A stretch of DNA of 64,000 nucleotides from Diplonema japonicum (GCA_964019335.1 OZ025715.1:1-64000); one strand, 5' to 3'; shown: positions 1-2,950, numbered from the stretch's first letter. Translations and numbers: made by a program. The notes: generated by a model not told the origin, from the sequence alone.

Positions 1-159
1 GGTTTGCGGGTTTGCGGGTTTGCGGGTTTGCGGGTTTGCGGGTTTGCGGGTTTGCGGGTTTGCGGGTTTGCGGGTTTGCGGGTTTGCGGGTTTGCGGGTT
101 TGCGGGTTTGCGGGTTTGCGGGTTTGCGGGTTTGCGGGTTTGCGGGTTTGCGGGTTTGC
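1..159. repeat. Perfect 8-bp tandem repeat (GGGTTTGC)n, about 20 units, running off the window edge; G-quadruplex-capable
   Basis: Directly visible. The G-rich strand points into the window, which is the wrong polarity for a left-end telomere. Confidence 0.97.
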
Positions 160-474
160 CTCCCCGAACCCCCCAAAGGTCTCCAACGCGAAAGGTACAA
201 AGGCCACGCGTGTCTTGGCGAGCTCCGCCTCATACTTCTGGCGCTTGTAGTGTTCCGCCTTCGCCGCTGCGTACCCCGCAGTCTTCGCCGCCTGGTTGAC
301 ACAAGACTCGTTCCTCGGGTGCACGATGACCACGTCCATAGCCATTAGGCGGGAACCCCCCACCCCACCTGGGAAGAATACGTCCGCCGGGCGCTGGGAC
401 GACCCCGGGATCAGCCCCGTCTTCTCCATCGTTGCGCTCACCCCGGCCCACTGACAGTGTCTGTGGATGATCTG
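160..474 (-). mobile_element. CRE/SLACS/CZAR-clade non-LTR retrotransposon fragment (restriction-like endonuclease domain), truncated at the 8-bp array
   Basis: Frame absent from the ORF track: QIIHRHCQWAGVSATMEKTGLIPGSSQRPADVFFPGGVGGSRLMAMDVVIVHPRNESCVNQAAKTAGYAAAKAEHYKRQKYEAELAKTRVAFVPFALETFGGFGE. RPAD...D, E-x2-K-x2-KY and F-x-PFALETFGGFG are REL motifs of CRE-clade elements. Confidence 0.85.
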
Positions 475-677
475 CGGTCACCTCCTCCTGCGAGTCGTCT
501 TGGATCCATTTTTTTTTTTTTTGTTTTATAGTGTGTGATGGGGGGGAGGGGATCCTTTCGTTGAGCGGCGGGCAGGCCGACGGGCAAAACAACCCCCCCG
601 GACGACGGCGACGACGAACGACGGACGCAGCGGCAAACCCAGGCAGAGGCGGCAGGCACCAGCAGAACACGAACGAC

Positions 678-716
678 CAATAAAGTACAGAAACTGTAGC
701 TTTAGAATCGTTGGAT
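678..716 (-). ncRNA. Full 39-nt diplonemid-type spliced-leader exon copy, probably from a retroposed trans-spliced mRNA rather than an SL RNA gene
   Basis: Minus strand reads ATCCAACGATTCTAAAGCTACAGTTTCTGTACTTTATTG, with the conserved CAGTTTCTGTACTTTATTG 3' half of euglenozoan SLs. It is followed by GTCGTT rather than the GTATG SL intron donor, and no Sm site is seen. Confidence 0.9.
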
Positions 717-899
717 AGGTGCTGCCCAAAAAAGAAGGGGAGTCGCACAAAAAGCCCCCTTAACTCCGAAGAGTGGGTGTTTTTTTTTTAGTCCAAGATA
801 TAGATTTTGATTTTGATGTGGTTAGCGTATGAAGGTTGTTTTAGTGCCTGCCAACATCAAAAACAAAAAGATACTTTGATTTAAAAAAAAACCTCTTTT

Positions 900-1221
900 C
901 ATTTTTTTGTTGTTGCTTTCTTTTTTTTGTTTTGTTTACTTTTTTTTTTTCTACTTCGTATTCAGCAACGGTCACAACGAAAGCGGATACACAGCACAGG
1001 GGGGAACCACGCACACACCAGCTACCTTACCCCCTCCGGCCATCAAGGCATACCAAGGACAGGGCGAATGGGTAACAGGGCCCGCTCTAAATCTAGCCCC
1101 GGCAAGGTTCACACACACACACACACACACACCACAGCTTGGGTACCTCTCACATTAGTTTCAGCCGAAGCTTACTTACAGGGGACGCCACGTGAAGGCT
1201 GTGAGTTGGATTTTGTCCCCC
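900..1221 (-). mobile_element. Short non-autonomous retroposon-like element: 5' HDV-like ribozyme, (TG)n, A-rich 3' tail
   Basis: About 190 bp are shared with 2690-2888. An A-rich tail lies at about 900-950 on the minus strand. No TSD was found and the 3' boundary is approximate. Confidence 0.55.
1149..1221 (-). ncRNA. HDV-like (nested double pseudoknot) self-cleaving ribozyme
   Basis: P1 GGGGGAC(1221-1215)/GTCCCCT(1186-1180) with G1.U wobble; P2 CTCACA(1205-1200)/TGTGAG(1154-1149); P3 GCC/GGC; L3 TTCACGT; P4 AGC-TTCG-GCT; J4/2 CTAA with the catalytic C. Confidence 0.85.
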
Positions 1222-1302
1222 AGAAGTCAGGCGTCGCCGTCAACCACGCCCCTGCATAGTGCATTGACTTTTTTTTTTTTTTTTTTTTTTCTTTTTTGAG
1301 TT

Positions 1303-1401
1303 TGACTCCGACATCAACCTCGCTCTCGAGCGTGCATCTGCTTTCGCCAAGAGGTCCTCCAGCGCCTTCTCATCAAGCACCCTAGAGAGCCACCTCTGGC
1401 T
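1303..1401 (-). mobile_element. Second CRE-clade retrotransposon fragment (region between RT and zinc knuckle), followed by a poly(A) run
   Basis: SQRWLSRVLDEKALEDLLAKADARSRARLMSES resembles the Q-x2-LS...LL...RARL-x-S segment upstream of the CRE REL domain. Confidence 0.6.
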
Positions 1402-1409
1402 GCAGATGT

Positions 1410-2282
1410 GGCCCATACACTGGGTGTACCTCTTCTCGATCCAGGACCTGCGGGCGGACGGGCCGTCCCTGTCGAGGGCCCGGTTCCAGCCCCCCAGCCC
1501 GGAGACCACGAACATCGACTCCCCGCGCGAGAGCTCCACCTTGTTGGGAGAACTGTTCAGCGACACTTCGAGGAGAAGCTGCTGAGGAGCTTCGTCCTGC
1601 TGTACAGGTGGTTGTGCCCCGCCACGATGAAGGCCCCGTTCCTCCGACAGGCGTCGAATGCCTGCGACAGCCCATAAACCTTGGGGTAGCGGTGGCCTGC
1701 CTGGTACGTCCCCTCGGGGCGGTGCCACATGCACACCCTCCAAGGCTCCGTGCTCCCTGCGAAAGACTTGTCGACGAAGTCCACAGCAGGCTTCGTGGTC
1801 CTCGAGTTCTCGTACCAGCTCCGGGGCCAGCTCGGAGAGAACTCGTCCCACCCGATCACCATGTGGACCCCTCGAAACCTGCACGACATCCACAACCCGT
1901 AGTCCGACTTCAGGTTGTTGCTCTGCGAGTCCCTCCCCGTGCACGCCTCCCGCAGCTCCTTCGTCATCTTGTTGTACAGCATGCTCTGGTAGCCGAAAGG
2001 CCCGCCCCACTTCGTGTCGTGGTTCCCGCTCGTCATCAACACGTGCTCCTTCCCGTGGCTGAACCAGTGCGAGTTCAGGAAGCGCTCCCAGTTTCCCGGG
2101 TTGTTCGTGTAGTCGAAGTCTCCGTTTTGCATCACGAGGTCAACCCCGTCCTCTCACATCAGCTTGTAGGCCAGCCCTGCACTTGACTTGTCGCTCGTGT
2201 CCCCGATGAAGCCTATTTTCAAGCAGCTGCAACTGGGCAGCAGCACCGACAGCAACGGGAGCAGCAGCACTGTGATTCGCAT
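1410..2282 (-). pseudogene. Secreted calcineurin-like metallophosphoesterase pseudogene (bacterial-like)
   Basis: Signal peptide MRITVLLLPLLSVLLP; motifs IGDT, NGDFDY, GNHD, MWH, AGHNHLYSRT, FVVSGLGG. In-frame TGA at 2154-2156, frameshift near 1565, and 3' end replaced by the CRE fragment. Confidence 0.85.
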
Positions 2283-2689: not shown

Positions 2690-2888
2690 TCCCTTACCTG
2701 TTCCTCCGACCATCAGCATCAAGACATGCCAAGGGCACGTCGAATAGGTAACAGGGCCGTTCTCATCTAGCCCCGGCAAGGTTCACACGTCACGCACACA
2801 TCACAGCTTGGGCACCAGTTTAGGCACTTATTAACCGAAGCTTACTTACAGGGGACGCTCCGTGAAGGCTGTGAATTGGATCTTGTGT
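2690..2888 (-). mobile_element. Decayed second copy of the ribozyme-headed element
   Basis: Shares CTAGCCCCGGCAAGGTTCACAC and CCGAAGCTTACTTACAGGGGACGC-x-CGTGAAGGCTGTGA with 1025-1215. The P1 5' strand, P3' and P2' are disrupted. Confidence 0.75.
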
Positions 2889-2950
2889 CTTCATTGGTCC
2901 TTTCGCATTGTGATTGTCTTTCTTTTTAGGTCCTTTGCTACCCTTCTTGT
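2885..2950 (-). pseudogene. Relic fragment of the repeat region of the CCCH/RBR gene
   Basis: KKGSKGPKKKDNHNAKGPMK versus KKGGKGPKKKDKHNAKGPKK in 5112-9461. Confidence 0.7.

What the first reader, a model, noticed from the sequence alone, without database searches (positions are those of the whole stretch)
900..1221. Intact HDV-like ribozyme heading a short A-tailed repeat: candidate new diplonemid SINE/SIDER-like family
Seen: all HDV elements in the correct order (P1 with G1.U, P2, P3, L3 UUCACGU, UUCG-capped P4, J4/2 CUAA); P1.1 is weak. A second decayed copy lies 1.7 kb away. Known: HDV-like ribozymes release the 5' ends of R2, RTE and trypanosomatid L1Tc/ingi-family retroposons. Inference: self-cleavage between 1222 and 1221 frees the element from read-through polycistronic RNA and could also cut host transcripts.
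Basis: partly seen in the sequence, partly recalled or inferred. Interest (0 to 1): 0.9.

Follow-up and report, generated by a model that had tools for sequence, protein, structure and literature searches.

The report
HDV-like ribozyme heading a diplonemid retroposon
A 73-base RNA fold of the hepatitis-delta self-cleaving type sits at the exact front end of a roughly 600-base non-coding jumping element in the protist Diplonema japonicum.

Summary
Minus strand 1221->1149 has every HDV-like element in order, with C1158 as the candidate catalytic C. No Rfam family reaches its gathering score, but three HDV-class models align with G1 at 1221. The genome (62.5 Mb, very probably Diplonema japonicum) holds two families with this head. 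Family A is young: 8 full-length and about 7 5'-truncated copies. Family B is older, with about 25 copies. In both, homology between copies starts at G1. P1 differs between A and B by three compensatory double changes. The same core occurs in 29 phage contigs, and all four helices covary there (98% of cells paired, 0/500 shuffles).

The interpretation needs correcting. The A-rich stretch at 900-957 is internal, because the family A consensus runs about 600 nt. The window copy is cut at about 715 and fused to a DNA-encoded spliced leader that heads a deleted LINE. No tRNA or 5S head exists, so it is not a strict SINE. No autonomous partner shares its sequence. Cleavage, transcription and any effect on host transcripts are untested.

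The scan had already found other ribozyme-headed retroposons elsewhere in this genome. This is a new member of a known kind, and the phage-type core is the unusual part.

The parts
1149..1221 (-). HDV-like ribozyme, 73 nt. Predicted self-cleavage is 5' of G1221, between 1222 and 1221.
   Evidence: Custom covariance model R1 scores 84.6 bits. Helices covary.
1215..1221 (-). P1 5' strand GGGGGAC. It pairs with 1180-1186 (GUCCCCU), with G1.U as the closing pair.
   Evidence: 7/7 pairs. Family B has GGGAGGU/ACCUCCU, which is three double compensatory changes.
1200..1205 (-). P2 5' strand CUCACA. It pairs with 1149-1154 (UGUGAG), forming the pseudoknot with P1.
   Evidence: In every phage lineage a different 4-8 bp P2 occupies the same position.
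1187..1199 (-). P3 GCC/GGC enclosing L3 UUCACGU.
   Evidence: P3 covaries to ACC/GGU and GCU/AGC in phage relatives.
1163..1172 (-). P4 AGC-UUCG-GCU, preceded by GUAAGUA (1173-1179). In GUAAGUA the leading GU is the 3' side of P1.1.
   Evidence: All three P4 pairs show double-sided changes across lineages.
1155..1162 (-). J4/2 GAAACUAA. C1158 is the candidate catalytic cytosine.
   Evidence: The CUAA aligns with the J4/2 of drz-agam-1 and HDV-F-prausnitzii.
1110..1135 (-). (TG)n microsatellite inside the element. Its length varies between copies.
715..1109 (-). Non-coding body of family A, including an internal A-rich stretch at 900-957. It is cut at about position 507 of a roughly 600-nt consensus.
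678..714 (-). DNA-encoded spliced-leader exon, joined directly to the truncated family A body.
161..677 (-). Remnant of a spliced-leader-headed LINE. It has a 5' UTR, an A-run near 520, an ATG at 507, an internal deletion, and a C-terminal piece with a PADV...DVVIV motif.
   Evidence: Longer copies in L003, L005 and L007 encode what looks like an AlkB-type oxygenase motif (read by eye; no Pfam test was run on it).
1..160 (-). (CAAACCCG)n tandem repeat running to the contig end. It is probably the 3' tail of that LINE family.
   Evidence: The same repeat follows a short spliced-leader-headed piece in L020.
2717..2893 (-). Decayed second copy of family A. The P1 5' strand and J4/2 are destroyed.

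Best explanation
The stretch 1221->1149 (minus strand) is a genuine HDV-like self-cleaving ribozyme. It forms the head of a non-autonomous, non-coding retroposon, family A (about 600 nt), which has an older sister family B (about 780 nt).

Inferred life cycle. A source copy is transcribed as part of a longer transcript, because no promoter module travels with the element. The ribozyme cuts 5' of G1 and so defines the 5' end of the element RNA. A reverse transcriptase supplied in trans by a LINE then copies that RNA. Full-length copies therefore begin exactly at G1, and incomplete copies are 5'-truncated.

The window copy is not a clean insertion. It is a 3'-truncated family A piece joined head-to-tail to a spliced-leader-headed LINE copy. 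The most economical reading is a template switch: the reverse transcriptase reached the 5' end of the LINE mRNA, moved onto a family A RNA, and ran to that RNA's 5' end at G1.

What is shown: the fold, its covariation, the coincidence of G1 with the family boundary, the copy numbers, and the fusion junctions. What is inferred: catalysis, read-through transcription, which LINE supplies the enzyme, and the template switch.
For: (1) All HDV elements are present in the right order, and three HDV-class Rfam models put G1 at 1221.
(2) There are 8 full-length family A copies. L005 and L007 are one duplicated locus, so there are 7 distinct flanks. Homology starts at G1, within 0-1 ambiguous bases, with unrelated upstream DNA. 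Family B also starts at its G1.
(3) P1 differs between A and B at three pairs, each changed on both sides (G-C>A-U, A-U>G-C, C-G>U-A), and G1.U is kept.
(4) All 29 IMG/VR phage contigs carrying the same unpaired core have a perfect P1 and P3, with 6 different P1 sequences. P2 (4-8 bp) and P4 also differ but still pair. Over P1, P3 and P4, 98.3% of cells pair against 64% in shuffles, 10 of 13 pairs change on both sides, and 0/500 shuffles reach the observed score. As a control, the same pattern hits 25 times in 596 Gb of prokaryote genomes. Only 2 of those hits fold, and both belong to one phage lineage.
(5) The ribozyme has 0 variable sites in 76 nt across family A copies, against 8 in 150 nt of body. 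About 4 would be expected, giving P around 0.02.
(6) 5'-truncated family A copies with intact 3' parts exist. Family A ends in an A-run in L006, and family B ends in (A)10-13.
(7) At least three independent fusions join A or B to a spliced-leader LINE at different junctions, and each ends upstream at G1: L003, L005/L007 and L020. L001, the window copy, may share the L007 event, differing only by a short deletion at the junction.
Against: No cleavage assay exists, and no RNA reads show a 5' end at G1. The read tool returned assembled contigs only. No Rfam family reaches its gathering score. P1.1 has only one Watson-Crick pair. Target-site duplications could not be found for four family A copies or the family B copies inspected by eye. 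No source of reverse transcriptase is tied to the family by shared sequence. Within this genome the covariation rests on only two families, which is effectively one divergence event. Many family B copies carry L3 ACGU>ACAU, which should weaken the active site. This is read here as CpG decay after insertion.
Confidence: 0.8

Rival explanations
1. The G1 boundary is set by transcription initiation from an internal promoter in the first ~75 nt, as proposed for the Pr77 region of L1Tc. On this reading the ribozyme fold is secondary, or has a dual use.
For: In trypanosomatid L1Tc the same 77 nt act as both promoter and ribozyme (PMC3383444, PMC3185411). No upstream promoter module travels with A or B.
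Against: Compensatory changes keep P1 paired between A and B. The same fold is conserved in phages, where a eukaryotic promoter role is meaningless. Selection is therefore on the RNA structure. A promoter role was not tested and is not excluded as an extra function.
Confidence: 0.08
2. Family A is not an independent element. It is the 5' module of a composite autonomous element, made of ribozyme, A body, spliced leader and LINE, which moves as one RNA cut at G1.
For: Half of the full-length family A copies are directly followed by the same spliced-leader-headed LINE (L001, L003, L005, L007). The L001 and L007 junctions lie only about 10 nt apart.
Against: The junctions differ: family A positions of about 258, 430 and 507-516, and family B position of about 84. 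L002 and L006 carry the full ~600-nt family A ending in an A or T run with no LINE. 5'-truncated family A copies end with family A's own 3' part. L005 and L007 are one duplicated locus.
Confidence: 0.08
3. The fold is a dead relic with no activity at this locus. The family is extinct, and the reader's idea that it cuts host transcripts or acts like SIDER does not apply.
For: The window copy is 3'-truncated and chimeric. It sits among co-oriented retro-copies at a contig end. Family A has only about 15 copies and family B copies are decayed.
Against: Family A copies are 97-100% identical and the ribozyme is invariant, so the family moved recently. An intact ribozyme will cut any transcript that runs through it, whatever the state of the rest of the copy. 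This rival concerns this one locus, not the nature of the element.
Confidence: 0.03
4. The resemblance to an HDV-like ribozyme is a chance match.
For: The minimum-free-energy fold is no better than shuffled sequence (z = 0.24), and all Rfam hits are below threshold.
Against: The folding program cannot form pseudoknots. Covariation is seen in all four helices, the genome has 22 hits against 0 for the reversed control, and only 2 of 25 chance pattern hits in prokaryote genomes fold, both from one phage lineage.
Confidence: 0.01

Closest known systems
L1Tc / NARTc / ingi-RIME Pr77 ribozyme (L1TcRz) of trypanosomatids
   Same: Also in Euglenozoa. It is an HDV-like ribozyme in the first ~77 nt of non-LTR retroposons, including non-autonomous ones, and is thought to free the element RNA from polycistronic co-transcripts (PMC3185411, PMC4035085).
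   Different: There the head is shared between the autonomous L1Tc and its non-autonomous derivatives and doubles as a promoter. Here no reverse-transcriptase-bearing element with this head was found. Sequence relatedness to Pr77 was not tested.
R2, RTE and other metazoan retrotransposon HDV-like ribozymes
   Same: The 5'-terminal ribozyme processes the element out of a co-transcript, as cited in PMC10879173 (Eickbush & Eickbush 2010; Ruminski et al. 2011). From established knowledge, not tested here, R2-type reverse transcriptases jump between RNA templates end to end. That fits the head-to-tail chimeras seen here.
   Different: Those elements are autonomous. Families A and B are non-coding.
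Phage HDV-like ribozymes (minimal drz / theta ribozymes, Kienbeck et al. 2024, PMC10879173)
   Same: These are the nearest sequence relatives found. 29 IMG/VR contigs share L3 UUCACGU, GUAAGUA and GAAACYAA with A and B. Two of the lineages start right after a tRNA 3' end.
   Different: The theta-ribozyme sequences visible in that paper's supplement have L3 U-CC-NCGY and a GG P1.1. This core has UUC and GU and keeps a P4, and 'TTCACGT' is absent from those supplementary lists, one of which was cut when stored. A and B have no neighbouring tRNA and sit in a eukaryotic retroposon.
Mammalian CPEB3 ribozyme (RF00622)
   Same: It has an identical L3 (UUCACGU), the same GGGGG start of P1, CCCCU followed by GU, and so the same weak P1.1 (alignment).
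   Different: The score of 17.3 bits is below the gathering score of 35. P2, P4 and J4/2 differ. CPEB3 is an intronic single-copy ribozyme, not a transposon head.
Other ribozyme-headed retroposons noted by this scan in the same genome
   Same: The strategy and the host are the same. Earlier notes report an element of about 320 nt with about 800 copies, a 523-nt element with about 20 copies, and LINEs inserted in T-tracts that have HDV-like heads (those reports were not checked here).
   Different: The exact core of A and B occurs only in these two families (22 hits). B copies lie behind A-runs rather than in T-tracts. No partner LINE was found.

Membership tests
HDV-like (delta-like) self-cleaving ribozyme fold | P1 of 6-7 bp starting at the cleavage-site G, closed by a G1.U wobble | tested here: met
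   7/7 pairs in A and in B. G.U is invariant in 9/9 lineages, and 6 of 7 pairs change on both sides.
HDV-like (delta-like) self-cleaving ribozyme fold | P2 helix that forms a nested double pseudoknot with P1 | tested here: met
   CUCACA/UGUGAG in A and B. Each phage lineage has a different 4-8 bp helix within 0-2 nt of P3 and of J4/2.
HDV-like (delta-like) self-cleaving ribozyme fold | 3-bp P3 with a 7-8 nt L3, and a P4 hairpin | tested here: met
   P3 covaries at one pair and P4 at all three.
HDV-like (delta-like) self-cleaving ribozyme fold | Two-pair P1.1 between L3 and the two bases after P1 | tested here: inconclusive
   There is only one C-G pair plus a U.U mismatch. The CPEB3 model has the same L3/GU combination.
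HDV-like (delta-like) self-cleaving ribozyme fold | Catalytic C at the start of a C-N-R-A J4/2 | tested here: met
   C1158-U-A-A. It varies to CCAA in some B copies.
HDV-like (delta-like) self-cleaving ribozyme fold | Mg2+-dependent self-scission 5' of G1 | not testable with these tools
   No raw RNA reads were available. A bench assay is needed.
Rfam drz-agam-1 (RF01787), HDV-F-prausnitzii (RF02682), CPEB3 (RF00622) | Score at or above the family's gathering threshold | tested here: not met
   21.8/37, 19.6/44 and 17.3/35 bits. It is not filed under any of these families.
Theta ribozymes (PMC10879173) | Core with L3 U-CC-NCGY and a GG P1.1, as seen in that paper's supplementary sequence lists | tested here: not met
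   A and B have UUCACGU and GU. 'TTCACGT' is absent from the paper's supplementary lists, one file of which was cut when stored.
Theta ribozymes (PMC10879173) | Cleavage site within 5 nt of a tRNA 3' end | tested here: not met
   No tRNA lies in any of the 30 A/B loci.
SINE in the strict sense | Head derived from a tRNA, 7SL or 5S gene carrying an internal Pol III promoter | tested here: not met
   No such RNA family is found in the window or in 25 A/B loci, and no tRNA.
Non-autonomous non-LTR retroposon (NARTc/RIME-like) | Dispersed non-coding copies with a fixed 5' end, 5'-truncated copies and an A-rich 3' end | tested here: met
Non-autonomous non-LTR retroposon (NARTc/RIME-like) | Target-site duplications and an identifiable autonomous partner | tested here: inconclusive
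   No clear duplications were found. The one LINE family examined shares no sequence with A or B. Most LINE families could not be fetched.
L1Tc/ingi Pr77 hallmark | Sequence homology to the 77-nt Pr77 consensus | not tested

The most novel reading that the evidence does not exclude
The diplonemid ribozyme and a phage-borne subfamily of HDV-like ribozymes share one ancestor. They have identical unpaired cores (UUCACGU, GUAAGUA, GAAACUAA), and one aquatic phage lineage has the same P3 and P4 stems. On this reading a phage or bacterial ribozyme crossed into a bacterivorous, endosymbiont-bearing protist, or moved the other way, and was then recruited as the processing head of retroposons.
Probability: 0.2. 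Interest if true: 0.8.

Novelty: new member of a known kind. Interest (0 to 1): 0.5.

Why it matters
Ribozyme heads show how retroposons get a defined 5' end in organisms that transcribe genes in long polycistronic units. In Euglenozoa this was known only for trypanosomatids. The paper library holds nothing on ribozymes or transposons of diplonemids, although diplonemids are among the most abundant marine protists.

Families A and B give a clean, young and very small system of about 40 copies with an invariant 73-nt head. The head-to-tail fusions to spliced-leader-headed LINEs may record RNA 5' ends in DNA. That makes both the ribozyme and the template-switching behaviour of the LINE enzyme testable.

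The shared core with phage ribozymes, which lies outside the theta-ribozyme sequences seen in the published lists, raises a question of origin. It also defines a compact ribozyme variant with a weak P1.1 that would be worth assaying.

Tried and rejected
(1) The minimum-free-energy fold is uninformative, because the fold is a pseudoknot.

(2) Rfam drz-agam-1 run genome-wide found nothing. RF02682 found a different family, C, and not A or B.

(3) Test of whether family B is the shell of an autonomous LINE. At C66 a B 5' fragment, a reverse-transcriptase ORF and a B 3' tail lie in order. But the LINE there is a 5'-truncated copy of a family whose intact member (L071) shares nothing with B, so the region is a nest of fragments.

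The partner search is therefore incomplete.

(5) Test for a Pol III launch pad, prompted by earlier notes on tRNA- or 5S-plus-ribozyme cassettes. No tRNA or 5S gene lies within 1.5 kb of any A or B copy.

(6) RNA evidence. All four runs laid were assembled contigs. One run, guessed to be RNA, has a 252-nt contig covering 963-1218, which is compatible with a discrete RNA but proves nothing. Several contigs change flank at 1221/1222, which only restates the repeat boundary.

(7) Target-site duplications were searched by eye in L002, L004, L006, L008 and several B copies. None was convincing.

(8) L075 from the first viral scan is a chance match with no fold.

Full report
**The observation**

The minus strand from 1221 to 1149 reads:
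- G1-GGGGAC (P1 5' strand);
- AAAAUCCAA (J1/2);
- CUCACA (P2 5' strand);
- GCC-UUCACGU-GGC (P3 and L3);
- GUCCCCU (P1 3' strand);
- GU-AAGUA;
- AGC-UUCG-GCU (P4);
- GAAA-C1158-UAA (J4/2);
- UGUGAG (P2 3' strand).

This is the full nested double-pseudoknot layout of an HDV-like ribozyme, with the G1.U closing pair and a C-U-A-A junction. It is the same L3/GU combination as the CPEB3 model.

Rfam at gathering thresholds reports nothing in the window. In E-value mode three HDV-class models match below threshold: drz-agam-1 at 21.8 bits, HDV-F-prausnitzii at 19.6 and CPEB3 at 17.3. The first two begin at 1221, and the CPEB3 alignment places its P1 there too. A plain energy fold is uninformative (z = 0.24), because it cannot form pseudoknots.

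**The families in the genome**

The assembly is 62.5 Mb in 132 contigs. It carries a diplonemid-type spliced leader. Its size matches the published Diplonema japonicum YPF1604 assembly of 62.3 Mb (PMC13598402). An earlier follow-up of this scan reached the same identification.

BLAST, a custom covariance model and an exact core pattern all find the head in only two families. The pattern gives 22 exact matches, against 0 for the reversed control.

Family A, which includes the window copy:
- It has 8 full-length copies at 97-100% identity and about 7 copies that are 5'-truncated or fragmentary.
- Homology between copies begins at G1, within 0-1 ambiguous bases, and the upstream DNA is unrelated in 7 distinct flanks. 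L005 and L007 are one duplicated locus.
- The consensus does not stop at the A-rich stretch 900-957. It continues to about 600 nt and ends ...UUAAUUAAAAUAUUUUUAAU, followed by an A-run in L006.

Family B:
- It is about 780 nt long, with about 17 close copies and older relatives of its 3' end. It ends GAGGUUUAUUUAA(A)n.
- It starts one base further 5' than a naive alignment suggests, at G-GGAGGU. It is often preceded by long pure A-runs.

Neither family has an ORF. None of the 30 A/B loci scanned holds a tRNA, and no 5S or 7SL match was found in the window or the 25 loci scanned against Rfam.

**Covariation**

Within the genome, P1 is GGGGGAC/GUCCCCU in A and GGGAGGU/ACCUCCU in B. Three pairs are changed on both sides and G1.U is kept. 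That is only one divergence event, so relatives were sought elsewhere.

- An exact-pattern scan of JGI metagenomes found three contigs with the same unpaired core. Their P1 is GUCAUGC/GCAUGAU and their P2 is AAGAAAA/UUUUCUU. The same lineage is present in IMG/VR viral contigs.
- A looser pattern fixed only L3, GUAAGUA and AAACYAA. It hit 29 IMG/VR contigs of 22-185 kb. All 29 have a perfect P1 with G1.U and a perfect P3, with 6 different P1 sequences. P2 (4-8 bp) lies against P3 and J4/2, and P4 is different but paired in each lineage.
- On a model-guided alignment of A, B and seven phage sequences, 98.3% of cells pair against 64% in shuffles. 10 of 13 pairs change on both sides, and 0 of 500 shuffles reach the observed score. 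Sliding the 3' partners by 1-3 columns drops pairing to 36-53%.
- As a control, the same pattern hits 25 places in 596 Gb of bacterial and archaeal genomes. Only 2 of those fold, and both belong to one phage lineage. The helices are therefore not a by-product of the pattern.

The invariance of the three motifs among phage hits is by construction. The helices were unconstrained.

Among family A copies the 76-nt head has no variable site, against 8 in 150 nt of body. This is weak support for selection on source copies.

**What lies in the window**

Every piece in the first 3 kb is on the minus strand. Reading that strand from 2282 towards position 1:
- a Metallophos retro-pseudogene with in-frame stops and a poly(A) at 1296-1268;
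- 46 nt of spacer (1267-1222);
- the family A copy from G1221 to about 715;
- joined to it without a gap, the spliced-leader exon (714-678);
- a 5' UTR, an ATG at 507 and an internally deleted LINE ORF;
- (CAAACCCG)n to the contig end.

Longer copies of that LINE in L003, L005 and L007 carry what looks like an AlkB-type motif. That was read by eye from the translation and was not run against Pfam.

The same kind of fusion occurs in other loci, at other positions in the element: L003 (family A position about 258), L005/L007 (about 430 and 516) and L020 (family B position about 84). In L004 a full family A copy follows the first ~300 nt of such a LINE.

In each fusion the A or B piece keeps its 5' end at G1 and loses a variable amount of its 3' part. 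That is what a reverse transcriptase would produce if it reached the 5' end of a LINE mRNA, switched onto an A or B RNA and ran to that RNA's 5' end. The triple repeat of the first 14 spliced-leader bases separated by A-runs in L005 also looks like repeated switching at A-runs. An insertion of the LINE into pre-existing family A copies is not excluded.

**The partner search**

The genome has at least 150 reverse-transcriptase matches, many in intact ORFs.
- None lies behind an A/B-type head.
- One suggestive arrangement at C66 proved to be a nest of fragments.
- Earlier follow-ups of this scan report LINEs with HDV-like heads elsewhere in this genome. Their heads do not carry this core.

**Expression**

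The runs available were assembled contigs, which cannot show RNA ends. One run, guessed to be RNA, holds a 252-nt contig covering 963-1218. Contigs of two other runs change flank at 1221/1222. Neither observation tests cleavage.

**Mechanism and rivals**

Best reading (0.8): this is a genuine ribozyme that defines the 5' end of a non-autonomous retroposon RNA, which a LINE enzyme mobilises in trans. The window copy is a chimeric, 3'-truncated by-product.

Rivals:
- an internal promoter sets the G1 boundary (0.08);
- a composite element of family A plus LINE moves as one unit (0.08);
- the locus is inert, which is compatible with the main reading as far as the nature of the element goes (0.03);
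- chance (0.01).

**Comparison with what is known**

Functionally the closest system is L1Tc/NARTc Pr77 of trypanosomatids (PMC3185411, PMC4035085). The next closest are the R2- and RTE-type heads.

By sequence, the closest relatives found are phage HDV-like ribozymes. They do not fit the theta-ribozyme sequences visible in the published supplement, which have a U-CC L3 and a GG P1.1. Families A and B also lack the tRNA neighbour. The element fails the strict SINE definition.

**Novelty**

The library holds no paper on ribozymes or retroposons in diplonemids. The scan itself had already found and followed up other ribozyme-headed retroposons on other DNA of this genome. This is therefore a further member of a known kind.

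Its particular points are the very strong cross-lineage covariation, the phage-type core and the recorded fusions to spliced-leader-headed LINEs. Interest is scored at 0.5. The most novel reading not excluded is shared ancestry with, or transfer from, phage ribozymes (about 0.2).

Noticed in passing
L076-L104 (IMG/VR contigs), L072-L074 (metagenome contigs): A phage-borne HDV-like ribozyme subfamily with an invariant L3 UUCACGU, GUAAGUA and GAAACYAA, and a weak CPEB3-like P1.1. There are seven lineages. Two start directly after a tRNA 3' end, and one aquatic lineage lies upstream of a 102-aa ORF. The core lies outside the theta-ribozyme sequences visible in the published supplement.
   Followed up: partly
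L062-L069 (G000 C38:60035, C74:116786, C61:112283, C38:46698, C74:300043, C14:695887, C14:772124, C2:219389): Another repeat family with a core like the HDV ribozyme as I recall it (GGGCAAC, GGCUAAGAG). It scores 24-28 bits to RF02682. Homology between copies extends upstream of the putative cleavage site, and P1 carries a U.C mismatch. Whether it is a working ribozyme is unclear.
   Followed up: partly
window 161-714 (minus), also L003, L004, L005, L006, L007, L020, L027: LINE copies whose DNA begins with the full spliced-leader exon. The leader is joined to at least three different downstream acceptor points of the same element (compare L001, L006 and L004). This suggests the copies were made from trans-spliced mRNAs. 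The scan has already noted it elsewhere.
   Followed up: partly
window 1-160: About 20 tandem copies of CAAACCCG (minus strand) at the contig end. The same repeat follows a short spliced-leader-headed piece in L020, so it may be the 3' tail of that LINE family rather than a telomere.
   Followed up: no
window 1268-2282 (minus): A calcineurin-like phosphoesterase (Metallophos, 37 bits) retro-pseudogene with in-frame stops and a 29-nt poly(A). It is co-oriented with the ribozyme element and lies 46 nt upstream of it.
   Followed up: partly
L035:2617-2724 and L036:2618-2725: A U5 snRNA (82 bits) lies 1.1 kb downstream of a duplicated family B copy, on the same strand. It could be the real gene or another retro-copied RNA in a chimera.
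   Followed up: no
family B copies, e.g. L033, L037, L039, L044: The CpG in L3 (ACGU>ACAU) is lost in many B copies, and the CpG of family A's P4 loop (UUCG) is UUUG throughout family B. This is consistent with CpG-directed decay of transposon copies, as noted elsewhere in this window by the scan.
   Followed up: no
L006:700-1010 (G000 C63:2722-3032): A 149-bp repeat with more than 160 candidate copies at 95-99% identity lies just beyond the 3' end of a family A copy. It is an unrelated high-copy short element.
   Followed up: no
L071 (G000 C52:155000-163600): An intact LINE with a 1429-aa ORF, preceded in the same frame by an open frame of at least 984 aa and separated from it by a single stop codon. 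The pair may form a read-through polyprotein.
   Followed up: no
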